Below, one piece after another: positions 11,279 through 51,759 of a stretch of 64,000 bases of DNA; the stretch's first letter is position 1; every line of letters starts with the position of its first letter. Source of the stretch: Lepidodermella squamata (Eukaryota > Animalia > Gastrotricha); contig JBLDXI010000009.1 of NCBI GenBank assembly GCA_047495785.1, positions 2,976,001 through 3,040,000 of the forward strand. The letters are read 5' to 3'. The position numbers and the translations under genes were made by a program. Below the pieces are notes generated by a model. It was not told where the DNA came from and ran no database searches. It saw only the letters and a list, made by a program, of their open reading frames with translations.

Positions 11279-14200
11279 CTAACGCTGAAACGACATTGGC
11301 GGGCGGTTACCAAGGTATTGGCCATAGCCCGGCGGTAAACGATTTTGTCGGTGTAAATTCGCTAAATTTTGCCGATCGGCTGTTCCCATGAAGGCTAAAT
11401 TTGTCGCGTAAGTATTACCGCCGCCCGGACTGTTGCTTGGATTAATAAATTCTGGCGGCAAGCGTTGCTGCCGTTGATGAAGCTGTTGTGATGAAGGCAC
11501 GGGTGTGGGCCGAAATTGTTCGTGTTGAGGTCTGTACGGGTAAGGGGCGGCGAAACCATGGTGGGCGGGCGGTGGGGCCATGGGTGATTTCCGCGATTGA
11601 GGCGGCTGGATCATTGATTGCCGGGATGAGACAATTGAAAGTCGATTGTCGTCGACGTAGCCGAAGGGCACGGGCGGTCGGGGCATTAACAGGTGCCGAG
11701 ATGGTTTTCGCCGGGAAAGGCAAACGACGACTACGACAATGAGAAGGAAAGCCATCACACCACCGGCGATGCAGCTGTAGACGATTGAGCTGGGCCACAT
11801 GTCATCAGGCCGAGGAAAAGAGGTTGTGATATCAGTCACAAGAGGAAGATCCCTATGAAAAATCAGAGAATTAATTGCAGAAAAGTAAATAAATAAATTA
11901 AATTCGTATCTTACATTTTAGTTAAAATTTAAAACAAATTAAAAAATTACATAATTACAAAAAATATTAAAAAATCGAAGAAAAAATAAATTACGTCGAT
12001 CTGCCAAAAGCCGGATTCGCAAAGGTTGGAACGACTATGGTGAAAATTTGAGAACGCGTTGCGTAATTGCCATCCTCATCAGAGGCCCAAACGATGGCGT
12101 AGTAGACCGGAGAAATTACATCGGGTGCCATCGCGACAGCCAGTCGGAAAGGATCTGTACTGTTTGTTGTTGCTGCGGAAGCGTTGGCCCAGTATCGTAG
12201 TTGTAAGTTCAGGTTTTGGATGTTGGCAGTTATAGCTAGGTAGTAGTTTGGTTTCTTTCCATATCGCAGAGCTGCGGTCAAAGGAGCGACGTTGCAGAAG
12301 ATTGTGAAATTCAACGGCAGTCGGTATTGCTCGTAAGTGCCGAAATTGTCAGCTTGAGGCTCGAGAACGTTATTGACACCGCAATCGCTCACGATGACAT
12401 TACCAAGAGGGAAGACCTTTGAGGCTATTAAATAACAAAAAAATATAAATTTGAGCGATGACTAAAATATTATCAAGTTTCAATCGTGCGAGCAGGTAAT
12501 TTTTTACAAAAGAAGGGCGCCGGCCTCGAAGCTCCTTGCGGAGCCAAGGCCCACGGCACCGCTGGTGGAGGCGATGGCTATAGAGGCTTGTGCTTGAGAC
12601 TGGAACTAAACTACCAGGACCTGCGTCTGAGAAGAGAAGACAGGCGGTGCCAGGACGGCTCCTCGGTGGTAGCTAGATGACCAAGTGCGTTAAACCCGAG
12701 AGTGGCTAGAATCCGAGCGTTCGGCGGCCGTGCTTCGGATTCGACTCGACTGATAGAGCGCGGGCGACCTAGAGACAAGATGCCTAAGGCTGGGGGATCT
12801 GCCGATCACGTGAAGACAGCGATCAACACTCAGCTAATCTTGAAGAAGGACAACTCGCGCCGCGCCTCCACATTCAACGCTCGCCTGCTTTTCCTTATCA
12901 ACACTATGGCTCCTGTAAAACTCCAAACCCGGTTAATGAGCTAAATTAGGTAATTTAGTGAAATTCAACAACGCGGCTGACCAACTCGTTGACAAATAGA
13001 ATTAAACAGTTACTCGACCTGAAACCAAATTTGAAATCCCCATATCGAAATTCGTTTCCTGTTTCGAGATATTCAGTGTGCAATTTGTGAATATGCAAAT
13101 GAGGTAATAATGCACACTTTAATATGCGCACGTATTTGATTGTGCGCGATGAATCATCACTAATAAAACCGCGTGCGTATTAATAATTTGACTTACTTCC
13201 AAATGGAATCACCAAGTCGAAAGATCCAGCCACTTTGTAGAAGGTCGCATAAATTCCTCTCCCTGTCACTTGAGTTACAGTTGCATTGTCATTAGCAACA
13301 CCAACAAGCGCTACTCCGGGCTTGACGAAGCAATTAGTCTCAGATTTTGTCGCATTCGGAGGTCTTAGACGAACATGGACAGTGTATGTCCCGTTCATAG
13401 TTGCGTTGACTAAAAGGGCCGTGTAGACACCGTCATTTGCAAACCCGTCTTCCCCCAAGCCGTCATCATACATTTTACCATCCGACGATAATAGGCGAGT
13501 TTCAACGGTGGCCGAGTTATCAGGATTGGGTATGGAAGCGTAATAAAGATCGTACTCAGGCTGACACCCGACCAAGGCATGAGGGCCCAGAGAAAAAATA
13601 GCGTAGACGCGAGGAAACTTGAAACGAGGCGATTGTTCGAAAACAATTTTGACCCCAGACGTTAGTTTCGCCTCGCCTTTCGGATATTTGTCCGGAACTA
13701 GGGCGATTCGGTTCTCCCACGGATCTATCCAAGGCTCGGGCACATAATTCTCGCCGGTATAGGCCGAACCCCATTCGAAGGGCCGTGATATTATCATGAC
13801 TGTGACTGGCCTAGCCTGAACCAGTCTCGTATCATTGGGCAGGATATACCTGTAAGAAAAAAAACAATAAATTTTCAAAAAAAAATAACAGAAAATTCTC
13901 TTACAGTGTACTATCTTTCCCGAAGGTGAGGTTAAGGTCGAGTCTGGTATCAGAGACATTTCCAAGCCGGCAGACTACTCGGAACGTTCTTTGAAACCCG
14001 CGGTCGTCTCGGGTGCAATTATCAGAATAATTTGAAGAAACCGTAACTGGAATAAGCAGCGCATCATGTTCGACAATAATCGTCGTATTCAAATTATAGC
14101 CCGGCGGAACTCTGAAAGGAATGCTTAAACTTTCACCGATCTTCGCCGTATAATTTTGAATCAAAATCGGTGTGCCGAAATTGTTGTCATCCAAAAACGT

Positions 14201-18968: not shown

Positions 18969-19817
18969 TATTCACTATAAATTAAAAAATTAAAATTTAA
19001 TTTATCGCAAAAATTATATTCTGAATTAACAAGAAATAGTTTGTCAAAGTTTAGCATATGATAGTGGTTGAATTTCAAGAATCAAATTGCTCCCACAATC
19101 AAGTTGCGTTGACGCTTAGAAGGTGTAGAATTATCTACTGGCAGCGAATCAACAAGCAAAACTTGTCCCGATATCTCACAGGTAAGGTAACAACACCTAA
19201 TTAACAGTTATGGCTGAAATTGCATGCGCTCACTTTCCGAAAAACGTCTCACAGCGCGTGAAGAGGTTTATTTATTACCTACAATTATCATCATCGAGGC
19301 TATCATTTTAGCGAGGCGCAGTGAGGTGGGCGGCGGGTGGCGGTGTTAAGTGCGTTAGAGGCGCGCGGATCAACATCTGCCTTTGTTGCAGAGCCGCTAG
19401 CGCACATCCGTTGCAAATGCATTACTTACTCAAATTGCCGGATTTGATGCGGCAAATATTTTAGCCGAGGTCGGAAACACGCCGCCTCGTCACGACTTGC
19501 ACATAATTTTCGTGTAAGGTGTTTTATTGTTGGCGTAAAAAGAGGGGCTGATTTTGCTGAGACTTACTACAAAAAATCGAGTCGCGTATAAACGAATCAG
19601 CCAACAGATGATGACGTGATATTGCTGCTATGAGGCGACCCCCAATTAATCTAAAAGCCGCAACTGAAAAATTGCAGTAGTTGTAATATACCGACGCCAA
19701 TCACTCTAATTTATTTTCGAGGTGCGTGCGCCGATTCACTTGCTCGCGATGATCGCGCCTAATTATTTTTCGAAAAACGGCCCTACTCCCTCAACCAGCG
19801 GCACAAATAATAATGGC

Positions 19818-20134
19818 CGCGGGTTTATCAGCAGCGTTGATGATTCATCGCGCATAATCTCAATGTGTGTGCGCATATTAAAATGAGCAATATTACTGCG
19901 ACCTCATTTGCATATTCACAAATTGCGCACTGAATATCTCCAAACAGGAAACGAATTTCGATCTGCGGATTTCGAATTTGGCTTCAGGTCGAGGAACTGC
20001 TTAATTTTATATATCATCAAGTTATTCAGCCGGGTTGGTGAATCCACAAAATTACCTGATTTTTAGCTCATTAACCGGGTTTTGAGTTTCACAGCAGCCA
20101 TAGTGTTGATAAAGAAAAGCAGGCTTGTATTGAT
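19818..20134 (+). promoter_or_regulatory. Type-3 Pol III promoter of 7SK-like copy 2
   Basis: ATTTGCAT(AT) octamer 19906-19913 (about -229); PSE-like TTAACCGGGTTTTGAGTTT 20071-20089 (-64..-46); GATAAAG 20108-20114 (about -27). Spacing matches the U6/7SK promoter layout. Confidence 0.7.
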
Positions 20135-20498
20135 GTGGAGGCGCGGCGCGAGTTGTCCTTCTTCAAGATTAGCTGAGTGTTGATCGCTGTCTTCACGTGA
20201 TCGGCAGATCCCCCAGCCTTAGGCATCTTGTCTCTAGGTCGCCCGCGCTCTATCAGTCGAGTCGAATCCGAAGCACGGCCGCCGAACGCTCGGATTCTAG
20301 CCACTCTCGGGTTTAACGCACTTGGTCATCTAGCTACCACCGAGGAGCCGTCCTGGCACCGCCTGTCTTCTCTTCTCAGACGCAGGTCCTGGTAGTTTAG
20401 TTCCAGTCTCAAGCACAAGCCTCTATAGCCATCGCCTCCACCAGCGGTGCCGTGGGCCTTGGCTCCGCAAGGAGCTTCGAGGCCGGCGCCCTTCTTTT
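20135..20498 (+). ncRNA. 7SK-like Pol III RNA, copy 2 (intergenic)
   Basis: 364 nt from G20135 to TTTT 20495-20498. M1-like stem 20135-20143/20433-20441; GATC motifs 20182-20185 and 20207-20210 in a long 5' hairpin; internal hairpins GAATCCGA..CGGATTC and CTACCA..TGGTAG; terminal hairpin 20446-20490. Confidence 0.78.
20495..20498 (+). terminator. Pol III oligo-dT terminator of 7SK-like copy 2 (copy 1 equivalent at 12508-12511, minus)
   Basis: TTTT immediately after the terminal hairpin; identity between the two copies breaks down a few nt later. Confidence 0.6.
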
Positions 20499-20614
20499 GT
20501 TAAAAAATTTGTCGGAAAATTCAATTAATCCACAATTATTTTATTACACAAAACATGAAATTGAGCCAAACAATAGGAAGTTTCAATGATCCACATTTTT
20601 CAAAATCAAATCGT

Positions 20615-23600
20615 CTAATATCGCTTAGTGTTATTCACCCCATCCGTCGCTCGGGTGTAGTACGCCTGTAGCTTCGAATTAGCGTTGTTCTGGTGATTAA
20701 CAACCAGTGTCGATTTATAGTGGTTCCCACCGCTCAGTAGAGTCGTCGGCTCCCTGATAGGCAGGAAAATCTCCTGGTTATTACCCGGTCTTCTAGCCAA
20801 CTGCTGAATTTTAACCGCGGGAGTCGGCGGGAAATAGTCCATATTCGGGAAAGATTGCCGGTGATTCCGCCCACCCGGCGGCGGGAATTTAACCCGCTGA
20901 TGCGGCTCGACCTGAGGCCTCACAAATTCAGCAGGCCGGGCAGTAGGATGATGACCGACAGGCCAAATCGAGGGTAGAAAGATGCGATTTGCGTCCTGAG
21001 CCCACGCCATTTTTCTCGCATTTTCGCGACGCCGCCAGAAGCAAACCAGGGTTACAGAAAACGCAGCGGCAAGGACGAGCCCAGCTACACAACTGAAAAT
21101 AATCGCATCTGGCATAGTGTCGTCTGGGCGCGGAAATGATGTTGTTATATCCGATACTGCTGGCAAACTAAAAAAATATTTTGATAATTTGTTTGTGAAA
21201 TTTCGAAAAAAATATCTTACTCATCTCTTGCTGTTTGAACCGAACTTAGTGGAGTATTAACTACCCGAATTTGAGACCTAGTCGCATAATTACCGAATCC
21301 ATCCGTCGCCCAGACAATGACGTAGTAATATGGCGCCAAGAAGTCGCTAATACTCAACGCTATTTGCAAAGTCTCCGCCTTAAAATTATACACCTCGTTG
21401 AGCGTAAAACTCGAGTTTACAGCATAACGAGTTTTATCCGCGAAATCAGCGATTCGATAGCTGACTGATAGGTAATAAGTGATGGTCAAATTGTAGCGGG
21501 TCGAAGTCGTCAATGGGTAGACATCGCAGTAGAGCAACATCGATTTCGGCAGCAAGCCACTTTGGCTCGAAATCGCAGGTTGCTGAGCGTATTGAACGTC
21601 TCTGACATCGCAATTTTTCACCCGAACAGCGCCGAGAGGAATAACTCGACTCGCCTCAGCAGGAACTGTGGCGTAGAAAGAACCAGCCGATTTGTAGAAG
21701 GAAAATTGAGTGTAAAAAATCGGAGCCTGAGCCAACAAATCCGCGTTATTCGCGTAACCAACAACAGCCGCTGATGGTTTCGTGTAACAACTTTGATCCA
21801 CCTTGCGTTTAACCCGGACATAGGCCGTGTAAGTTCCGTTCGAAAGGATTGATCCCTTCAATAAAGCCGTGTAAACTCCATCGTTCGCGAAACCATCCTC
21901 GCCTAGCCCGTCGTCATACATCCGGCCATTTAGGGTGACTAAAGCCGAACTATTTGTTGTATTTGAAACGTATAAATCATACTCGACGTAGCAGTTCAAA
22001 ACTGCCGATTTTCCAGACGCGATAATCGCGTAAATTTTTGGGAATCGAAATTTCTGCGAGTTTTCGAACACGACACTAACGCCTGATGTGAGTTTCGCCT
22101 CGCCTTTGACGTATTGCTCGGGTGAGGTAGCGAGTCGGTATGTCCAAGGATTGTCCCACGGCTTAGGGGTTATGTTATTAATAGCCCCAGTGTTAGACGC
22201 GCCGTACTCAATGGCGCGTGAAACGACCCAGGCGACTACGTCAAACGCCTCAGTTTTCTTACTCGTAGTTCCAAATTGAATTGTTAGGGTGTTGGAGGTA
22301 ACTGAGGTCAAATCGCCGAAACGACACGCGACTCGGAAAAACGCTTGGTAGCCCCGGTCATCGTCCGAACAATTTGCCACGCCAAAGCCAACGGGACCAG
22401 CTGGTAAAAGGTTCGAGTCGTAACTAACGACTACCGAGGTGTTAAGGCTGTAATTCGGCGGTACTGAAAATTGAATGTCGACACTTTCGCCTGGTTTAGC
22501 TTTATATCGTTCGATTTGCAACGTCATTCCTAGGTTCAAGTCGTCGAGGAAGGTCGCTAGCGCGTAAAACCAGTGGTACATGTCGAGAGGGTCTTGGATA
22601 AATTGCCAACGGCCGTAGGTTGAATTCGCGACATATTGGATGTAGTCTAGGAGAGGGTAGTCTACACTCGCCTGGGCTCGTCGAACTTTGTCGACGGGCC
22701 AGAGTGAAACTGGCCAGATTGAATAGCCAGCTTTGTGAATGCTGGTGAGAAGGCGGCTATCGGTCGGCGCAAAGCCGAGAAAATCGGATAAAAGTAGGAT
22801 ATTAAGGCGGTAGTTGGGCTGTTCGAGAAACTTCTCCAATAGTCCTTCGACACCTGTCATAAATGTTTTAATATTTCTTAAAAATACGTGGGCTAGTGGT
22901 AATTAAAATGTTAATTAATTGCAAAATCAGAGAAATTTCTGGCCACGCTCCAAAATTCCGTAAAATCAAATTAAAAATGCCATTGTTTCTTCTGTAATAC
23001 AGCGTGTCCCATAGTTGCACAACTATTTTTTAACTTGGCAAGCTTTTGTAGGAAATTCAAATTATTTTTTCAGTTTAAACCTACCGAGAGAAAATTACAT
23101 CTTTTATCCGCGATTTACCCGAAGAAATAAAAATTTACCGGAGAATACCCGGAAAACCCCGATGGTAACTGGTTCGGTAATTATCGGTAATTTACCCACC
23201 CGAGTAGTAGAGCCGGAGTAAACCGTAACGGTTTTTCAGGATTCAAATAATTTCCCGCGCGAACCTTGGTCGCTATTCGCGCCAAAAAGGTCTCACGTGA
23301 CCTGAAAATAAATGTTGACCAAGGTTCGCGCGGGAAATTATTTGAATCCTGAAAAACCGTTACGGTTTAAACCGGCTCTACTACTCACCCGGTCGGACAA
23401 AATTTCTCCGGACTTTTTTTTAAGAATTGACATAGCTGATTCTCGTGAATTTTTGAATTTTTTAAAAAAAAATTCCGGCTATGAGATGTGCCTTCGCCTC
23501 TCATTTTAGAGTTTCTGAACCCTTTTCCGTGCATTTTCTTTGCTTGCGTTACTTATGGAACACGCTGTAGGACCACCAAACACCAAGAACAACTTCGAAA

Positions 23601-40299: not shown

Positions 40300-42650
40300 T
40301 GTCGGAGAATGACGAAAATTCAGAATGGATTCTCGCTGAACCTCGCCAATGATTCACTTGCGAATTTTGCCACTAATATCGCCAAATGCCTTCAAATCTC
40401 AAACACTCAAATCGAATCCTGAACTTCGTTTCTACGTGATATCGGCGATCTCTTCAATTACGTCAATTTGATTTGGTCCCAAAACAATGTATTCCTACGA
40501 TAATAATACTCAGCGAATCGTCATATAACGAAACTGACTGGAACTTCAATCGAGCCCGAGAATGGCCGAAGAAGCCGAAGAAGATTTGGTAGAATCGACA
40601 ACCAAGCTTTGAAAGTGATGAGATCATACTTATCTAACCGGTACCAAATCGTCAAAGTCAACAATAGTCTCTCGTCGCCGCTCAAAATCAACTTTGGAGT
40701 GCCTCAGGGAAGTGTTTTAGGCCCGCTGTTGTTTACAATGTATATAAACGAAATCTCATCTACAGTTCTTCATTCATCTATCGCGCAATACGCCGATGAC
40801 ACCACTATCTATTACAGCCACGAATGCCCGGACATCGCCCAGACGCGCCTTCAAGCTGACTTGGACTCGATGTGTTCTTGGCTCGGACGAAACTGCTTGC
40901 AAGTGAACGGCAAGAAGTCTCAGCTACTGGTCCTCTCAACCAAGAGAAAGAAACCGAACATCGAAGTGACAGTCGAAGGTGTGAAACTTGCAGATTCGAA
41001 GACCATGAAAATTCTCGGGTTAACGTTGGACAATGCGTTACTCCTGAAAACGCACATCAGCGAAGTTCGCGCTAAGGCGAACCGAGGTACCTACGCTCTT
41101 AAAATGGCTTCAAAACATTTGAACAGGAAATCTTTGGTCACGATGGCTAACGCAGTAGTATTGAGTCACTTGAACTACTGTGACACAGTTTTGGACCAGG
41201 CGTCTGACAGCAATCTAAAAGCTATTCAATCCGTCCAAAACAGAGTCATGCGCATCATCCTACGAAAAGACCGAACGGCTGACCCTAGCGAAATGCAAAA
41301 TCAACTGGGTTGGCTTGACATGGCGGGCAAGCGAAAAGTGCACATCATCACAATGGTTTGGAAATGCTTGAACCAAGAAGCGCCTACAACTTTGCGCGAT
41401 ATGTTCAAATCGAAAGAACAACCACGCAACCTACGCAGCTATTTCGACCAAGCTTTGGAAGTGCCATTTTTCACTTGCAAACGTGCTCAATCAACTCTCG
41501 CTTTCAAAGGTGCTGTAGCTTGGAATGCTTTGCCTCGCCACGTACAAGAATCGAAATCAGCGCATGAGTGTCGACAAAATGTATATCTTTACCTTCTCGG
41601 CGATGCGCCATTCCAGTTTTCAAACGCGTCCCAAAAATTGTAAATTTTAATAGAAACTATTTTTATATGAGCTTACCTTACATCTCATTCTCTCTAATTT
41701 TAACGTTAATGTGGAGCCAATTGTTGTTGTTGTTTTGTATTATCACTACCAAAATGAACAAATGGAATTTGAAACGGACTGAATATGACTCTGATTTTTC
41801 TGCCGGCTATGAGTGGATTGCCCGATTAACATTGTTGTGAGCGTTCGGCTACGGACTTAAGCTCTTAAATAAATAAATAAATATCTTTCCTACGCAACCA
41901 ATTTAGACTACATCATTTTTCTGAAAAACCTTCAGGTAAAGCCCATTGACAACCTAAATGATTATACGGTGTTACGGTGATGTCAGGTATCTGTCAGAAG
42001 CGGGATACTAAGGGGAACTTGGCTATTGTTAGAGCAATACACGATCATGCAGTTCACGGCGGAATCATTGTGCTTTCCACCACGATATCTCACGAGTTGG
42101 GTCATGCTTTCAGTAAGTTTCGGCTGTACAAACCAGTTGATTAATACTTATTGATTGAAAAAGACAGTTACCACGACACACGTGCCAAAGTACTGACCGG
42201 AGTAGTGCAGTGAACGCAAAAGCTCATGGTCAGATTGCAGTCGTAAAGCTACTAGCGAGCACCTTAGAAACCTTCGCCTCATCGCCCCATATTGCTTGAG
42301 GACGCCGCCGGAGATAAACCCGAAGTTACGGCTTGACAGAAAATATTTGCGGAAACGGTATTGTAGAGGAGGGCTAAGAATGCGACTGCGGAATCAAATT
42401 AAATATGTACTGGACCACCTTCAAGAACATATTTTCCTGAATTGGTTTGCAAAACAAGTCAAAGGTCTGTAGGCATCAATCTCGTGGTTTGAGTCTCTTG
42501 ACACGAGATCAAATTGGTTTGAGTACAAGTAAACGATTGGAATGAACTATACTCACTATCCGTGGATTATTTCAGCTCCTGCCATGTTCACAAAACCGTT
42601 ACCGAGGACTACAACTAGAACAATTGCTTTGGCCTCGGAACGGATGAGAA
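40300..42650 (+). pseudogene. Degraded ADAM pseudogene split by a LINE insertion
   Basis: 40320-40600 resembles 43440-43735 (gaatgga..aacctcgccaatg.., tttggtcccaaaa); 41890-42390 resumes with CACGAGTTGGGTCATGCTTTC (HELGHAF) and TGCGGAAACGGTATTGTAGAGGAGGGCTAAGAATGCGACTGCGGA (CGNGIVEEG*ECDCG) containing a stop. Confidence 0.8.
40600..41883 (+). mobile_element. 5'-truncated non-LTR retrotransposon (CR1/L2-like) with RT C-terminal ORF 40609..41643
   Basis: FGVPQGSVLGPLLF, YADDT, ILGLTLD and LNYC motifs; ~240-nt 3' UTR ending in (TAAA)n. Confidence 0.9.
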
Positions 42651-42909
42651 AGATCTGGTAAACGACACAAATGATGCTGTATCCTATCCATCATGGTCCT
42701 GTAAAGCTTCAGCCACAACAATATCAGTGATTACAATATTAACGACGCCAGGACTTTGCGATGCTGTTCACGTTAACTCAATAAAAACTTCCACCTTAAC
42801 GATCCTTGAGAAATTCGTATCATTCTACCTATGACTTGAGCTACAAGTAATTCAGCTGCGTGGATCAGCTGAAAAATTATCCTAATTTGTCTTCTGATCT
42901 GAGATCTTA

Positions 42910-45610
42910 ATGCTTCTCCTTGCAGCCTTTTTACTTGCGCATTTGAAGCTGTCAGACCAAGAGCTTAGTGGCTTTGGCACATGGCACGAGAAATCACTTG
43001 GTCCCGGCCGTGTTACTGTGACGAAGCCATTAAATAGTAAGAGCCGGATTCTCGCACCTGAGGAGGAGAATCCTAACACACTGGTTGTCAACTTTGTTAT
43101 TCCTAAAACTAACCACGGTGGCCGATGTGAGTTGGCAATAAACCGGCGATTTATTCCATCAAATTTCACCATCGATTTTGAAGGCACAATCGGGACTTAC
43201 AAAACGTGCCAATACAACGGAATAGCTTCCTTTGAAAATTCTCCCCACCTAACCAAATGCACGTTCAGCTTTTGCCCAGGCTTCAAATCTGGGCTAGTTT
43301 GGTTAGCAGGCGACAAAGCTCTCATTTCCATGGTGGGTGGTGATGCGGAGTCGTGGAATTTTTCGATGCATGGCGAATATCAACATCTTTCAGACATTGA
43401 AAATGCTTCCACGGATGATGACACATTGAATTATTTGAATTCTGAATGGATACGTGAGTTGAAAAGGGCTATTCAACCTCGCCAATGGTATCACTTACGA
43501 GTCCTTGCGCTCGTATCAGCAAGCGCCTTCACATCGATTTTTGAGTCAAATGTACATCTGACTTTTTCAGCGATATCGAATATTTTCAATTTTGTCAACT
43601 TGGTTTGGTCCCAAAATAATGTTTTGATTTACTTACCTCTGATTAAAATACTCAATGAATCCTCATATAACGACACAGCTTGGGACATAGACAGCGACAT
43701 GGTTTACGTGAAGAATAATATCTGGTCAGATTCCAACTACTCGAAACAGTTTGATTACGTAATTTTATTTAAACATTTGCAAGCTGAATTAAATAATGCA
43801 TCTATTTCAATCGGCCTTACGGCGCTTAACAGTGCCTGTAAATGGCGAGATTTATTAGCTAGCTTGGCTATTGTTAGAGTGTTAGGGCCTGACCTCTCAC
43901 TACTGGACAGAATGATTAAGCTTTCAATCACCGTAGCTCACGAATTGGGACATGCCTTTGGTGAGTGTTAGTTGTAATCGAATGCAGCTCTTTTAAATAT
44001 TCATGTTCGCTGAAATTGTAGGTGCGAAACACGATACTGAGAATTGCACATGTCCAAGCTATGATCGCAAATGCTTGATGCTCCGTACATTAGAAGAAGT
44101 CAGTGCACGGAAAGTTTATTGGGCATGGTCGGATTGCTCCCGTGGCTTCATAAGTGAATACTTGAGAAGTCTTAGCTTGTTTGCTCCTTATTGTCTAAAG
44201 AAACCGCCGGAAATGAGCCCGAAATATGGGATTAAGGAAGGAATCTGCGGTAATGGTATTGTGGAGGAGGGCGAAGAATGTGACTGTGGAATCGAGACAG
44301 GGCCTCCTGGAAGATATAATTTTCCGGGACTTTTTTGTAAAGACAAAAAATGCTGCAATTTTAGAACGTGCAAACAGCACAAGCGCGCCGCCTGTGCCCA
44401 AGGTGAATGCTGCAATCCGTCGACGTGCTCTTTCTACAACAAATCAAATGTTTGCCGTGTTGCGACTTCGCCATGCGACCTGGCTGAATATTGCTCTGGC
44501 GATTCAGCGACCTGCCCGCCAGATCGAGTCTTTATGACAGGAACGCCCTGCTCAATCACCTATGAGTCGAAGATCTTCAACGGAACATGTCATGCCGGTG
44601 AATGCTTAAGCCGGGAAGAGAGCTGTTCACGCTTGATGGGTGGGGTGTTTTACGAGGATCGAGCAGTTGAATGCCAGCGGGATAATATGCAAGGAATACC
44701 AGGGGCAAACTGTGGGCATGAAAGTTTGGTTGGCAAGGAGGATAGTGATAGATTCTATTATGGTTGTGCTAATGCGGAAGATGCTCAATGTGGATCGCAG
44801 AAATGTTGGAACATAACTGAGTCGGTATTGTGGGAGCACCAACTCATATACTATACATATCAGGGCAAGTGTATTTCTTTCGACAGGGATACGGTTAGTT
44901 TCTACGTATGAGATTCGCTTTCCCCAATTAAGTCCTCAATTCTAATTGTTCTCACAATATAGTTCCCAGATTCTGGTTTAACACCGGATGGCATGCCATG
45001 CTCAAATGGAACGAAATATTGCATGAATAATAAATGCAGCGAGGCCATGCCTACTTGTGACGATCCACCCTGTGACAATTTTGGTGTTCACGTTTATGAC
45101 TGGGAATGGTATGATACTAACTATTCATACCCATGGATCATTCCAGATCCTCCCATGTTACCACGGACAACAACTGTTAGACCGACAACAACGACAACGA
45201 GTCGCGTGAAATTAAGGACAACGATGAGAACCCCACAAACTACCCAAAAGGCCGTCTATTCCTCAACGGTGAACAGCAGTACAATGAAAACTTTGACTAG
45301 CTTCGGCAGTTCCAGAGGTTCCACCAAAACGTCATCAAGCACAGCTAGGGCAATGACTAAATCTACGCCAGTACCTTCAAAGAAAACTTCTACTTCGAAG
45401 GGAGCAACGGCGTGGATTGGTACAAGGACAATGAAACCTGAAGTCGTCACCCCATTTTACTATCAAAAGCGTACCTACAAGCCAGCAAACAGCTCGCCGA
45501 AAAATTCAGCTCTAAACCTGTATGCGGCTGACAAAGCCATCCAATTTCTTTTTACTAACTTTGCCACGGTTGCGTTTCTGGTATTCGGCTGCTGTGATTA
45601 CTGTGGTTAA
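42910..45610 (+). CDS. ADAM-type metalloprotease-disintegrin A (introns 43961-44021 and 44894-44962)
   Basis: Spliced zinc motif HELGHAF|GAKHD; Met-turn CLM; disintegrin CGNGIVEEGEECDCG...CDLAEYCSG; Cys-rich domain; Thr-rich stalk; hydrophobic C-terminus. Confidence 0.9.
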
Positions 45611-47901: not shown

Positions 47902-48681
47902 CGTATAATATCATTCAAATGGTTCAGCTGTCAGAAATTTAATTAGCTAGTAGCGACTAGTTCTGCGGCTTGGGTATTTTCTATGCCGCAGGCCGAATAT
48001 TTGCATCCTGGGTATTGGCGATCTTCGTCTATGCAATCGACTACAGTTCGATCGACACTGTACGCGAGAGTACAGTCATGAACTGTACTAGGCGCTACAG
48101 CCGATCTGAGATGTACATTGTACTACAGTCACTGAACTGTACTGAGCTTTACAGCCGATGTGAGCTGTACTGTACAATACAGTCTTTGAACTGTACTAGG
48201 CGCTACAGCCGATCTGAGCCGTGCTATGCATTACATACGACGCACTGTAAATGACTGTACAGTTTCAACCGGCTGTACAATTATTTACAGCTGCGAGAAC
48301 TGTACTTGGCACTTGGCAATACAGTAAAATAATAAAAAAAATCCCCAAAGTGCGGGTTCTTCCGCGACTTGAACGATATGACGCCCCATGCCACAAACGA
48401 ACATTCTAATACGCTAGCGTTATAGTCCGAGAGGATCAAAGTCCACGTTTAGCTGAAAAATGAGATCGTCACTTCGTCGTAGTCGTCGTGTCCGAAAAAT
48501 ACTTGATTGGCTTATTCGCGTATTAACTACGCGTATTAACTCAGAAAAAACTCTACCTTAAAATTCGTATTTTTTCACCTGACTCGTAATGAGACTCGTA
48601 ATGCGAACTGGAACTGCTATAATTCAGCTGCGATGGTCAACTAAAAATGTTCACTTCGTATATTGATTTTTGTAGCAATTT

Positions 48682-51600
48682 ATGCTGCTAATTGCAACCT
48701 TTTTACTTACGAATTTGAAGCTGTCAGACCAAGAGCTTAGTGGCTTTGGCACATGGCACGAGAAATCACTTGGTCCCGGCCGTGTTACTGTGACGAAGCC
48801 ATTAAATAGTAAGAGCCGGATTCTCGCACCTGAGGAGGAGAATCCTAACACACTGGTTGTCAACTTTGTTATTCCTAAAACTAACCACAGTGGCCGATGT
48901 GAGTTGGCAATAAACCGGCGATTTATTCCATCAAATTTCACCATCGATTTTGAAGGCACAATCGGGACTTACAAAACGTGCCAATACAACGGAATAGCCT
49001 CCTTTGAAAATTCCCCCCACCTAACCAAATGCACGTTCAGCTTTTGCCCAGGCTTCAAATCTGGGCTAGTTTGGTTACCCGGCGACAAAGCTTTCATTTC
49101 CATGGTGGGTGGTGATGTGGTGTCGTGGAATTTTTCGATGCTTGGTGAATATCGAAATCTGCCGTATATCAACCGAATGTCCACAGAAACTATTAAACAT
49201 AGTTCTTTGAATTTTGAATGGATACGTGAGTTGAAAAGGGCTATTCAACCTCGCCAATGGTATCACTTACGAGTCCTTGCGCTCGTATCAGCAAGCGCCT
49301 TCACATCGATTTTTGAGTCGAATGTAGATCTGACTTTTTCAGCGATATCGAATATTTTCAATTTTGTCAACTTGGTTTGGTCCCAAAATAATGTTTTGAT
49401 TTACTTACCTCTGATTAAAATACTCAATGAATCCTCATATAACGACACAGCTTGGGACATAGACAGCGACATGGTTTACGTGAAGAATAATATCTGGTCA
49501 GATTCCAACTACTCGAAACAGTTTGATTACGTAATTTTATTTAAACATTTGCAAGCTGAATTTGATAATCAAACCAATCAAATCGGCCTTACGAATTATT
49601 ATAGTGCCTGTAAAAGGCGAGATTCATTGGCTAGCTTGGCTATTGTTAGATTATCAAGGCCTGACCTCGCATTACAAGGCAGAATTTTTAAGCTTTCAGC
49701 CACCATAGCTCACGAATTGGGACATGCCTTTGGTGAGTGTTAGTAGGAATCGAATGCAGCTCTTTTAAATATTCATGCTTGCTGAAATTATAGGCGCAGA
49801 ACACGATACTGAGAATTGCACATGTCCAAGCTATGATCGCAACTGTGTGATGCTTCCTGCAGCGGGAAAGGACAGTGCACGGAAAGTTTATTGGGCGTGG
49901 TCGGATTGCTCCCGTGGCTTCATAAGTGAATACTTGAAAAGTCTTAGCCAATTTGCGCCTTTTTGTCTCAAGAAACCGCCGGAAATGAGCCCGAAATATG
50001 GGATTAAGGAAGGAATCTGCGGTAATGGTATTGTGGAGGAGGGCGAAGAATGTGACTGTGGAATCGAGACAGGGCCTCCTGGAAGATATAATTTTCCGGG
50101 ACTTTTTTGTAAAGACAAAAAATGCTGCAATTTTAGAACGTGCAAACTGCACAAGCGCGCCGCCTGTGCCCAAGGTGAATGCTGCAATCCGTCGACGTGC
50201 TCGTTCTACAACGATTCGAAGCTATGCCGATTAGCAACTTCGCAGTGTGACCTGGCTGAATTTTGCTCTGGAAATTCATCGGTTTGCTCGCCAGATCGAG
50301 TGTTCATGACAGGAACGCGTTGCTCAATCACCTATGAGTCGAAGATCTTCAACGGAACATGTCATGCCGGTGACTGTTTAAGCCGGGAAGAGAGCTGTTC
50401 ACGCTTGATGGGTGGGGTGTTTTCCGAGGATCGAGCATTTAAGTGTCAGTCTAACAATATGCTAGGGGAGAAAGGGGCAAACTGCGGGCATGAAAGTTTA
50501 GTTGGCAAGGAGGCTAGGGATAGATTATATCATCGTTGTGTTAATGCGGAAGATGGTCAATGTGGATCGCTGACATGTTGGAATGTCAATGTTTCGGCGT
50601 TGGCAGAGCGCAGAATGAAGTATGTAAGGCGAGGCAAGTGTTTTTCTTTCGACAGCGATACGGTTAGTTTCTACGCATAATACCCTTTACCCTTTTAAAG
50701 GATTAAGTTATTGGTAAGTCTTCAATTCTAATGTTTCTGGCAATAAAGTTCCCAGATTCTGGTTTAACGCCGGATGGCATGCCATGCTCAAACGAAACGA
50801 AATATTGCATGAATAATAAATGCAGCGAGGCCATGCCTACTTGTGACGATCCACCCTGTGACAATTTTGGTGCCCGCGTTTATGATTGGGAATGGCGCGA
50901 TACTAACTATACTGATCCATGGATCATCCCAGATCCTCCCATGTTGCCACGAAAAACAACTGTTAGACCGACAATAACCACAACGACTCGCGCGAAATTA
51001 AGGACAACGATGAGAACCCCACAAACTACCCACAAAAATGTCTACTTCTCCACTGCGATCAGCAATACAATGAAAACTTCGAGTAGCAACGGCAGTGCAA
51101 TAACTTCCCCCACAAATAAGGCTTCAAGAACAGCTGTGACAACTGCCAAATCTACGCCAGTGCCTTCAATGAAAACTTCTACTCCGAGGGCAGCAACGGT
51201 ATCGATAGTTACTTCCACTACAAAGGCTGCAACCACTGCTAGGACAACCACCAAATCGAAGAAAATAAGGACAACGATGAGAACCTCACACACTACCCAC
51301 AGAACTGTCTATTCCTCCACGGCGATCAGCAGTACAAGGACAACTTTGACTAGCTCCAGCAATGCCAGAACTTCCACAACAAAGGCTTCAACCCCTGCTA
51401 GGACAACCACCAAATCTGCAACAGTGACTTCAACGAAAAATTCTACTTCGAACGTAGCAAAGGTGTCGATTGTTTCTTCTACTACAATGGCTTCAACCGC
51501 TGCTAGGAAAACTACCATTCCTGCGACAGTGCCTTCAACGAAAAATTCTACTTCGAACGTAGAAACGGTGTCGATAGATACAAGCACAGCGAAACCCGAA

Positions 51601-51759
51601 GTCGTCACCCCGTTTCACTATCATAACCATGCTGACTTGCAAGGAATCAGCCCGACGAAGAATTCAGCTCTAAACCTGTATGTAGCTGGCGAAGCTGTGC
51701 GAGTTTTCCTGACTTACCTTCCCGCGGTTTCATTTCTGGTATTTAATCTCGTCCGCTGA
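48682..51759 (+). CDS. ADAM-type metalloprotease-disintegrin B (tandem paralog with longer mucin stalk)
   Basis: HELGHAF|GAEHD, CVM Met-turn, disintegrin and Cys-rich domains; same two introns as A; expanded Thr/Ser repeats 50950-51600. Confidence 0.9.

What the first reader, a model, noticed from the sequence alone, without database searches (positions are those of the whole stretch)
20135..20498. Unannotated, highly divergent 7SK-like snRNA gene with a complete type-3 Pol III promoter, present in two copies
Seen: 364-nt unit with octamer ATTTGCAT at -229, PSE-like box at -64..-46, TATA-like GATAAAG at about -27 and a CCCTTCTTTT end. The 5' GUGGAGGCG pairs with CGCCUCCAC just before a terminal hairpin. 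A long 5' hairpin contains UU-GAUC-GCU(GUCUUCACGUGAUC)GGC-A-GAUC. Known: human 7SK has the same promoter class, a 5'/3' closing stem (M1) followed by a 3' hairpin (M8), and the HEXIM-binding UU-GAUC-GCC...GGC-U-GAUC motif. Inference: this is this lineage's 7SK, or a 7SK-derived novel Pol III RNA, with little other primary similarity to known 7SKs that I can see. The ORF track shows it only as spurious duplicated peptides.
Basis: partly seen in the sequence, partly recalled or inferred. Interest (0 to 1): 0.88.

Follow-up and report, generated by a model that had tools for sequence, protein, structure and literature searches.

The report
Divergent 7SK snRNA gene pair

Summary
The unit at 20135-20498 (+) recurs, inverted and 100% identical, at 12508-12871 (-). 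Identity is perfect exactly from -2 to +365. The 330 nt upstream carry about 45 substitutions plus indels, and the downstream sequence cannot be aligned.

- **Pol III signs:** there is no internal T4 run, and the unit ends in a T4 run after a stable 3' hairpin.
- **Architecture:** a 9-bp stem joins the 5' end to the bases just before that hairpin.
- **Family match:** the 5' hairpin carries UU-GAUC...A-GAUC. It gives the only Rfam match, a local hit to Arthropod_7SK (17.3 bits, E about 0.01, below the gathering score of 44). RNase P, MRP, SRP, U3 and tRNA models do not match.
- **Expression:** contigs from soil, lake and species RNA libraries cover only the gene body. A DNA run covers the flanks too.

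My reading is a genuine, highly divergent 7SK snRNA gene pair with an upstream Pol III promoter (confidence about 0.8).

Not shown: covariation (no homologues could be fetched), exact RNA ends, a PSE comparison with U6, and partner proteins. The organism was not identified.

Side result: copy A with its promoter makes up a complete 772-nt intron of a CLCA-like gene.

The parts
20135..20498 (+). Copy B: predicted 364-nt 7SK-like RNA
   Evidence: 100% identical to copy A exactly over -2..+365. No internal TTTT. RNA-run contigs lie within 20155-20418 only.
12508..12871 (-). Copy A: identical 364-nt RNA gene, inverted relative to copy B
   Evidence: blastn 364/364. Lies inside an intron of a minus-strand CLCA-like gene, in the sense orientation.
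19806..20134 (+). Copy B upstream (promoter) region, about 87% alike between the two copies
   Evidence: Similarity to copy A's upstream region starts near -330 and carries about 45 substitutions plus indels.
19901..19926 (+). Longest perfectly kept upstream block (-234..-209), holding the octamer ATTTGCAT at 19906-19913; candidate distal element
   Evidence: no differences in this block. One search shows the octamer alone is at chance frequency. Function is inferred.
20062..20082 (+). Perfectly kept 21-nt block (-73..-53); candidate proximal sequence element
   Evidence: Could not be compared with a U6 promoter of this genome. Function is inferred.
20107..20114 (+). TATA-like TGATAAAG at -28..-21
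   Evidence: Copy A has G at -22, so only TGATAA is shared. A weak box.
20135..20143 (+). 5' strand of the closing stem (M1-like), GUGGAGGCG
   Evidence: Pairs with 20433-20441. Pair probabilities 0.80-0.999.
20173..20216 (+). Distal 5' hairpin with GAUC at 20182-85, 20199-202 and 20207-10; candidate HEXIM site
   Evidence: Rfam Arthropod_7SK model positions 27-72, 17.3 bits, E 0.009-0.019. Motif 2 observed against 0.01 expected. The 7SK-type conformer folds at -9.6 kcal/mol against an MFE of -13.3.
20264..20297 (+). Stable internal hairpin
   Evidence: z = -2.74. A>G at 20266 in relatives keeps the pair as G-U.
20433..20441 (+). 3' strand of the closing stem, CGCCUCCAC
20443..20492 (+). 3' terminal hairpin: GCAA loop, 5-bp upper stem, UU bulge on the 3' strand; candidate LARP7 site
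   Evidence: -32.3 kcal/mol, z = -2.98. Bulge and loop G compared with human SL4 as described in PMC5175362.
20495..20498 (+). T4 run; Pol III terminator giving a U-rich 3' end
   Evidence: Identity between the copies stops 2 nt after it.
12425..13196 (-). Intron of the CLCA-like gene made almost wholly of copy A plus its promoter
   Evidence: GTAAGT donor at 13196 and TAATAG acceptor at 12425. Removing it restores an open frame that aligns without a gap to the uninterrupted exon of the tandem paralog.

Best explanation
These are two copies of this animal's 7SK snRNA gene.

**Proposed mechanism**
- RNA polymerase III transcribes each copy from an upstream (type-3-like) promoter: a TATA-like box near -27, a conserved block at -73..-53 and a conserved distal block holding an octamer near -229.
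- Transcription starts at about 20133-20135 and stops at the T4 run at 20495-20498, giving a ~364-nt RNA with a U-rich 3' end.
- The RNA closes on itself through a 9-bp stem between its 5' end and the bases just before the 3' hairpin.
- The distal 5' hairpin presents a paired GAUC/GAUC motif with a UU bulge on the 5' side and an A bulge on the 3' side.
- By analogy with characterised 7SK RNPs, a HEXIM dimer binds that motif and then captures and inactivates P-TEFb (CDK9/cyclin T).
- A LARP7 homologue would hold the 3' hairpin and U tail, and a MePCE/Bin3 homologue would cap the 5' end.

**Shown here:** gene anatomy, selective conservation of exactly the transcribed part, the family-specific motif, and presence in RNA libraries.

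**Inferred:** the polymerase, the exact RNA ends, all protein contacts and the effect on P-TEFb.
For: - **Family match:** Arthropod_7SK is the only Rfam hit. It falls on the GAUC hairpin with 14 of 16 model pairs formed. No other family matches at E <= 10 within the unit.
- **Literature criterion:** the search criterion of Marz et al. is two base-paired GAUC motifs 6-30 nt apart in a 5' hairpin (quoted in PMC2995076). It is met: 21 nt apart, and the conformer is feasible.
- **Motif rarity:** 2 observed against 0.01 expected.
- **Core stems:** the M1-like stem has pair probabilities of at least 0.98 for eight of its nine pairs. The 3' hairpin has z = -2.98, a two-pyrimidine bulge on the 3' strand and a G in the apical loop, followed by a single-stranded U-run.
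- **Pol III compatibility:** no internal T4.
- **Selective conservation:** perfect identity of the two copies from -2 to +365, against about 13% divergence upstream. The chance of 367 unchanged positions at that rate is about 1e-23.
- **Expression:** at least 15 RNA-labelled environmental or species runs hold it. In three RNA runs the contigs lie only within 20155-20418 with zero depth on both flanks, while a DNA run covers the flanks evenly.
- **Variation in relatives:** 7 of 13 variant positions fall in unpaired positions of the MFE model.
Against: - The Rfam score of 17.3 bits is far below the gathering score of 44. It covers only 46 of 351 model positions.
- The 3' part gets no 7SK hit.
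- The 7SK-type pairing of the GAUC motifs is not the MFE. A third GAUC allows a conformer that is more stable by 3.7 kcal/mol.
- The whole-RNA folding z-score is only -1.6.
- No homologue could be fetched, so there is no covariation evidence.
- The TATA-like box is weak, the octamer is at chance frequency, and no U6 promoter of this genome was available for comparison.
- The RNA contigs do not reach either predicted end.
- Perfect identity could owe something to recent gene conversion rather than selection alone.
- HEXIM, LARP7 and MePCE genes could not be looked for.
Confidence: 0.8

Rival explanations
1. A lineage-specific Pol III small RNA that is not descended from 7SK. Its GAUC hairpin, closing stem and 3' hairpin would resemble 7SK only by chance or convergence.
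For: The covariance score is sub-threshold and local. The 3' part has no family hit. The middle 200 nt match nothing. The MFE prefers a non-7SK pairing of the GAUC motifs.
Against: The E-value of 0.009-0.019 already allows for all 4227 families. The match covers the flanking CUGAG...CAG stem as well as the UUGAUCGC...GCAGAUC core. Three separate architectural hallmarks co-occur in the right order and at the right size.
Confidence: 0.08
2. A 7SK-derived mobile or retroposed cassette (SINE-like element or pseudogene family), not the working 7SK gene.
For: - The cassette has moved: copy A is inverted, 7.3 kb away, and sits inside an intron.
- In DNA run X1 the 3' 65 nt reach a summed depth of up to 1634 against about 86 on the flanks.
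- One X1 contig joins 20192 to 20433, and another shares only the first 10 nt before diverging. These hint at further variant copies.
- Other first-stage notes report Pol III cassettes on transposons in this genome (unchecked).
Against: - The duplication includes about 330 nt of promoter, so it is DNA-based and not retroposition.
- There is no A-tail, no tRNA-like part and no decayed copy in 64 kb.
- The gene body's depth is about 2.5 times the flanks, not hundreds of times. The tool also warns that summed depth is not copy number.
- Both copies are intact and identical, and the RNA is abundant enough to assemble from environmental RNA.
Confidence: 0.07
3. The stable RNA is made by RNA polymerase II and processing, as proposed for Drosophila snRNA:7SK:94F, rather than by Pol III. 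For example, it could be cut from the CLCA-like pre-mRNA intron (copy A) or from a longer precursor.
For: Copy A lies in the sense orientation inside an intron. The TATA-like box is weak and the PSE is unverified. A Pol II route has been proposed for a second Drosophila 7SK (PMC8406779).
Against: Unlike 7SK:94F, this unit has no internal T-runs and ends at a T4 run. Copy B is intergenic and convergent with its neighbour, so no host transcript can supply it. About 330 nt of upstream sequence travelled with the gene and keeps perfectly conserved blocks. RNA contigs never extend into the flanks.
Confidence: 0.05

Closest known systems
Arthropod 7SK RNA (Rfam RF01052; Gruber et al. 2008)
   Same: The distal 5' hairpin matches the model consensus CUGag..UUGAUCGC...GCAGAUC..CAG, including the A (not U) before the second GAUC. 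Overall size class, upstream promoter and U-run end are also shared.
   Different: Only 46 of 351 model positions align. The score is 17.3 bits against a gathering score of 44. The 5' end, the interior and the 3' hairpin are not recognised. A third GAUC sits in the loop region.
Vertebrate 7SK snRNA (Rfam RF00100; human 331-nt RNA)
   Same: - Paired GAUC motifs with a UU bulge on the 5' side (PMC2995076).
- A long-range 5'/3' closing stem (SL0/M1; PMC10083321).
[quoted passage not shown]
- From my own memory only, not tested: the first bases (AUGUGGAGGCG against human GGAUGUGAGGGCG) and the last bases (UUCUUUU) also look alike.
   Different: There is no detectable similarity in the interior. 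The 3'-side bulge is A rather than U. The 3' hairpin is about twice as long, with a 4-nt GCAA loop instead of AUGUG. The candidate is 364 nt, not 331.
Drosophila snRNA:7SK:94F, the 'alternative 7SK' (PMC8406779)
   Same: A second 7SK-like locus with M1, M3 and M8-like motifs, located inside an intron of a protein-coding gene, with a PSE/TATA-like upstream region.
   Different: 94F has five internal T-runs and is thought to be cut from a Pol II lncRNA. It also differs in sequence from the canonical fly 7SK. Here the two copies are identical, lack internal T-runs and end at a terminator.
Tentative 7SK candidates in Schistosoma and Caenorhabditis
   Same: They show how hard 7SK is to recognise outside vertebrates, arthropods, molluscs and annelids: only the 5' stem is recognisable (PMC2770079; PMC8406779).
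   Different: The Schistosoma candidate lacks a conserved 3' stem, and the Caenorhabditis one is disputed as a U8 homologue. The present RNA has all three core modules.

Membership tests
7SK snRNA | Two base-paired GAUC motifs 6-30 nt apart in a 5' hairpin, flanked by bulges (the HEXIM site) | tested here: met
   GAUC at 20182-85 and 20207-10, 21 nt apart, with a UU bulge on the 5' side and an A bulge on the 3' side. The conformer folds at -9.6 kcal/mol. CM alignment. Motif 2 observed against 0.01 expected. Criterion quoted in PMC2995076. Caveat: the MFE pairs GAUC1 with a third GAUC instead.
7SK snRNA | Reaches the curated Rfam gathering score for RF00100 or RF01052 | tested here: not met
   No gathering-level hit in the window. 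The best is 17.3 bits against 44, local to model positions 27-72. This is a curated detection threshold, not a biological property. Invertebrate 7SK RNAs are known to escape such searches (PMC2770079).
7SK snRNA | Long-range closing stem between the 5' end and the region just before the 3' hairpin (M1/SL0) | tested here: met
   9 bp, 20135-43 with 20433-41, pair probabilities 0.80-0.999.
7SK snRNA | 3' terminal hairpin (M8/SL4) followed directly by a single-stranded U-run | tested here: met
   20443-20492, z = -2.98, UU bulge on the 3' strand, loop GCAA, then CUUCUUUU. No sequence-level match to the 7SK models.
7SK snRNA | Upstream type-3 Pol III promoter (TATA, PSE, distal element) like the same genome's U6 | tested here: inconclusive
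   Conserved blocks at -234..-209, -73..-53 and -39..-23 between the copies, and a weak TATA-like box. The octamer is not above chance. There is no U6 gene in the window, so the PSE could not be compared.
7SK snRNA | Pol III-compatible body: no internal T4 run, terminator at the end | tested here: met
   Only one TTTT, at 20495. 21 occur in 2 kb of flank.
7SK snRNA | Abundant stable RNA of about 330-450 nt | tested here: inconclusive
   Present in many RNA libraries. Contigs are confined to 20155-20418 in three RNA runs, with zero depth on the flanks. Size and ends were not measured, and the runs were chosen because they hold the sequence.
7SK snRNA | Structure supported by compensatory changes among homologues | tested here: inconclusive
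   No homologue sequences could be fetched. Only single-position variants from close relatives are known, mostly in unpaired positions.
7SK snRNA | Binds HEXIM, LARP7 and MePCE and sequesters P-TEFb; partner genes present in the genome | not testable with these tools
   Only one 64-kb window of the genome is available, and no binding data exist.
SINE / Pol III-derived retroposon | Internal A/B-box promoter or tRNA/7SL/5S-derived head, an A-rich or repeat tail, and many dispersed decayed copies | tested here: not met
   No tRNA-like part and no Rfam tRNA, 7SL or 5S hit. Copies share about 330 nt of external upstream sequence. No decayed copies in the window. The genome-wide count was not available.

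The most novel reading that the evidence does not exclude
The 7SK gene here may behave as a movable, modular unit in two ways.

- **Intron gain:** a complete promoter-plus-gene cassette was copied 7 kb away into a coding gene. It now makes up an entire 772-nt spliceosomal intron that the tandem paralog lacks. That would be an intron gained from, or wholly replaced by, a Pol III snRNA gene.
- **Second type:** the same species may carry another 7SK-like type that shares only the closing stem, the 5' half of the GAUC hairpin and the 3' hairpin. This is hinted at by a DNA-run contig joining 20192 to 20433, and by another sharing only the first 10 nt.
Probability: 0.25. Interest if true: 0.6.

Novelty: new member of a known kind. 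Interest (0 to 1): 0.42.

Why it matters
7SK is a central brake on RNA polymerase II elongation in animals. Its sequence drifts so fast in invertebrates that it is missing from the annotation of most non-model genomes, and Rfam's models miss this one.

A well-delimited new 7SK keeps only the three core modules: the closing stem, the GAUC hairpin and the 3' hairpin with its U tail. It therefore helps define the minimum the RNP needs. It gives a seed for finding 7SK in this animal's relatives. It also offers a natural variant of the HEXIM site (an A bulge and a third GAUC) to test.

The RNA appears to be common in soil and freshwater metatranscriptomes, so homologues for a covariation study should be easy to collect.

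The intron made of a Pol III gene cassette is a separate curiosity, relevant to how introns arise.

Tried and rejected
**Homologue searches**
  - None resembles the RNA beyond the pattern.
  - Every match lies in a stop-free stretch of at least 79 codons, mostly on GC-rich, bacterial-looking contigs.
  - Six of the least coding-like loci gave no 7SK hit.
- A 25-base pattern found nothing in genome contigs or viral contigs.
- I tried to reach homologous contigs through the spurious peptides that gene callers predict inside the RNA. Nothing came from the search for homologous proteins, the search of protein representatives or the look-up of encoding contigs.
- Synteny: the closest relative of the neighbouring SIX homeobox gene is P0001 (66% identity, on metagenome contigs L001/L002). 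It has no 7SK-like gene nearby.

**Organism identity (not resolved)**
- Exact-protein look-ups failed.
- The CLCA-like exon found no relatives.
- SIX hits are equidistant from molluscs, arthropods and rotifers.
- Atlas searches were uninformative.

**Literature**
- No paper holds the sequence.
- The two searches pairing 7SK with 'tardigrade' and with 'rotifer' returned only incidental mentions, none reporting a 7SK gene in either group. The 15 listed papers of the genus-name search did not contain '7SK' at all.
- The two key papers, Gruber 2008 and Yazbeck 2018, are not held.

**Rejected identities**
- RNase P, MRP, SRP, U3, U6atac, Y and vault RNA: no Rfam hit at E <= 10 within the unit.
- tRNA-derived SINE.
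- Gene on the opposite strand: the promoter conservation, the terminator and the CM hit are all on the stated strand.

Full report
**The observation**

- It begins GUGGAGGCG.
- It holds UUGAUCGC-15 nt-GGCAGAUC at 20180-20210.
- It holds CGCCUCCAC at 20433-20441, followed by a GC-rich hairpin.
- It ends CCCUUCUUUU at 20498.

A repeat search finds the second copy as an inverted repeat. Arms 12500-12873 and 20133-20506 are 374 nt long and 100% complementary. A word-7 blastn of the RNA against the whole window finds only these two copies and no partial or decayed ones.

**The boundaries of conservation define a transcript**

I aligned the two copies with their flanks and counted the differences.
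- The 330 nt upstream are recognisably alike but carry about 45 substitutions and several indels. The last differences before the gene are at -10, -9, -7, -6 and -3.
- From -2 to +365 there is no difference at all.
- The next differences are at +366/+367, and beyond about +375 the sequences no longer align.
- At the upstream divergence rate, 367 unchanged positions have a probability of about 1e-23.

So selection, perhaps helped by gene conversion, acts on exactly the unit bounded by the predicted start and the T-run.

Inside the upstream region the longest perfectly kept blocks are:
- -234..-209, which holds the octamer ATTTGCAT;
- -73..-53;
- -39..-23, which ends in the TATA-like TGATAA.

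The octamer is not itself remarkable: 5 in the window against 6 expected. Only its position in the best-kept block speaks for it. The unit has a single TTTT, at its end, while 2 kb of flank have 21. The unit is 59% G+C against 44% for the flanks. All of this fits a Pol III gene with an external promoter.

No U6 gene lies in the window, so the proposed PSE could not be checked against another type-3 promoter of this genome.

**Family assignment**

At gathering thresholds Rfam finds nothing in the window. With permissive thresholds on the region, the only relevant match is RF01052, Arthropod_7SK. Model positions 27-72 align to 20173-20216 at 17.3 bits, with E 0.019 in 801 nt and 0.009 in 376 nt.

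The aligned part is the distal 5' hairpin. It matches the outer CUGAG...CAG stem, the UU bulge, GAUCGC, and GC-A-GAUC on the return strand. Fourteen of the sixteen model pairs are formed.

No model for RNase P, MRP, SRP, U3 or any other small RNA matches within the unit, even at E <= 10, and ARAGORN finds no tRNA-like part. The 3' third of the RNA gets no 7SK hit on its own.

The motif TTGATCGC-N(6-24)-GCWGATC occurs in the window only in the two copies, against 0.01 expected.

Published work treats two base-paired GAUC motifs 6-30 nt apart in a 5' hairpin as the top search criterion for 7SK, and as the HEXIM binding site (PMC2995076). Here the outer GAUC motifs are 21 nt apart.

**Structure**

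- **Closing stem:** the MFE structure joins 20135-43 to 20433-41. Pair probabilities are 0.98-0.999 for eight of the nine pairs. This corresponds to the M1/SL0 stem of the 'circular' 7SK model (PMC10083321).
- **3' hairpin:** 20443-20492 is significantly stable, at -32.3 kcal/mol and z = -2.98. It has a 5-bp upper stem under a GCAA loop, a UU bulge on the 3' strand, a longer lower stem, and then a single-stranded CUUCUUUU. [quoted passage not shown] The layout is the same, but the hairpin here is longer and the loop differs.
- **Internal hairpin:** 20264-20297 is also stable (z = -2.74).
- **Weak points:**
  - The whole-molecule z-score is only -1.6.
  - The 5' hairpin is not unusually stable.
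  - A third GAUC (20199-20202) lets the MFE pair GAUC1 with GAUC2 at -13.3 kcal/mol. The 7SK-type GAUC1:GAUC3 conformer reaches -9.6 kcal/mol. Alternative GAUC pairings are also discussed for human 7SK, but I have not tested their relevance here.

**Expression**

The 364-nt sequence is held by many public runs labelled as RNA. These include soil, lake water, sediment, microbial mat, root, plant, moss and freshwater metatranscriptomes, and runs of three other labelled organisms.

I laid four runs on 19700-20800.
- **DNA-like run X1** (organism A) covers both flanks evenly at about 86 and the gene body at 213.
- **Three RNA runs** have contigs only within 20155-20418 and zero depth on both flanks. 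They are a soil metatranscriptome, a lake metatranscriptome and organism B.
- **Close matches:** contigs with one or two mismatches over 200-260 nt occur in both the soil and the lake libraries. More divergent relatives share 20157-20220 and then drift.

The runs were selected because they hold the sequence, the contigs have no strand, and they do not reach the predicted ends. This shows an abundant RNA from the gene body. It does not show its size or ends.

Variant positions seen in close relatives fall mostly in unpaired positions of the MFE model (7 of 13). One, 20266 A>G, keeps its pair as G-U. That is compatible with the structure but too little for a covariation test.

**Unexplained in the DNA run**

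- The last 65 nt (closing-stem 3' strand plus 3' hairpin) reach a summed depth of up to 1634, in several short variant contigs.
- One contig (depth 419) joins 20192 directly or indirectly to 20433.
- One contig has the same first ten bases and then 19 different ones before rejoining at 20162.

The tool warns that summed depth is not copy number. Taken cautiously, this suggests further 7SK-like variants in that genome that share only the core modules. It is far from the hundreds of decayed copies expected of a SINE.

**Genomic context**

Both 7SK copies lie among two tandem CLCA-like genes and a SIX homeobox gene, all on the minus strand.

- **Copy B** is intergenic. Its promoter faces the SIX gene's upstream side, and its terminator faces the 3' end of the second CLCA-like gene.
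- **Copy A** is on the minus strand inside the first CLCA-like gene.
  - A GTAAGT donor lies at 13196 and a TAATAG acceptor at 12425.
  - Removing these 772 nt gives an open frame. It aligns without a gap, at 42% identity over 351 residues, to an uninterrupted exon of the paralog.
  - Similarity to copy B's cassette starts within about 6 nt of the donor and ends about 70 nt before the acceptor.

So the intron is essentially the cassette. Either the cassette landed in a typical short intron just after its donor, or its insertion created the intron. I cannot tell which.

The cassette was copied as DNA, because the promoter came along, and in the opposite orientation to the tandem duplication of the host genes.

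**Homologues and organism**

All attempts to fetch homologues failed.
- The metagenome pattern scan returned only chance matches in bacterial-looking coding sequence.
- A stricter pattern found nothing in the prokaryote genome and viral collections.
- The spurious-peptide route found nothing.
- The nearest relative's SIX locus has no such gene.

The organism stays unidentified. It is a metazoan with SIX, CLCA-like, class-C GPCR, ADAM-like and voltage-gated channel genes. The genome is compact, with about 43% G+C and roughly 60-nt introns. Its SIX protein is equidistant from molluscs, arthropods and rotifers. The habitats of the runs suggest a ubiquitous micro-invertebrate.

In the held literature, 7SK is accepted in vertebrates, arthropods, molluscs and annelids. 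It is tentative in Schistosoma and disputed in Caenorhabditis.

**Verdict**

This is most likely the lineage's 7SK snRNA, in two identical gene copies. It is recognisable only by the three core modules and invisible to standard annotation.

It is a new member of a known kind. Membership fails only the curated Rfam threshold. Covariation, the U6 promoter comparison, end mapping and partner binding remain to be done.

Noticed in passing
window 12425-13196 (-): The whole 772-nt intron of the first CLCA-like gene is the 7SK cassette (promoter, gene and about 70 nt). Splicing it out restores a frame collinear with an uninterrupted exon of the tandem paralog (21217-22860). This is either intron gain by cassette insertion or insertion into a short pre-existing intron.
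   Followed up: partly
window 20143-20161, 20192/20433 and 20437-20500, as seen in DNA run X1: Variant contigs share only the first 10 nt, then 20162-20192, then 20433 onward. Several variants of the 3' hairpin occur (A>G at 20469; deletions at 20467 and 20469), with high summed depth. This may be a second 7SK-like gene type in the same species. The contig sequences could not be retrieved.
   Followed up: partly
window 20199-20202: A third GAUC in the loop region lets the 5' hairpin switch between two pairings: GAUC1:GAUC2 at -13.3 kcal/mol and GAUC1:GAUC3 at -9.6 kcal/mol. All RNA-run relatives carry A>U at 20195 in the loop.
   Followed up: partly
window 42907-45600 and 48679-51750: A tandem duplication of about 5.8 kb (91-99% identity) carries ADAM-like genes with reprolysin and disintegrin domains. 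Its 3' part shows extra internal repeats of about 100-270 nt in the second copy.
   Followed up: no
window 40609-41643 (+): An ORF with a reverse-transcriptase domain (RVT_1, E 7e-17) lies just upstream of the ADAM-like tandem pair.
   Followed up: no
window 23202-23271 / 23317-23386: A 70-nt inverted repeat, 97% complementary with a 45-nt spacer, lies inside the span of the second CLCA-like gene. It may be a hairpin element or a MITE.
   Followed up: no
window 48079-48262: Three overlapping copies of a 76-nt unit at 54-nt spacing (75-78% identity) lie between the two ADAM-like repeats.
   Followed up: no
window 19968-19982: GGATTTCGAATTTGG in copy B's upstream region loosely resembles a tRNA B box. 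Copy A has CAAA instead of CGAA, and no tRNA model matches. It may relate to another first-stage note that this genome's snRNA genes lie downstream of tRNA remnants.
   Followed up: partly
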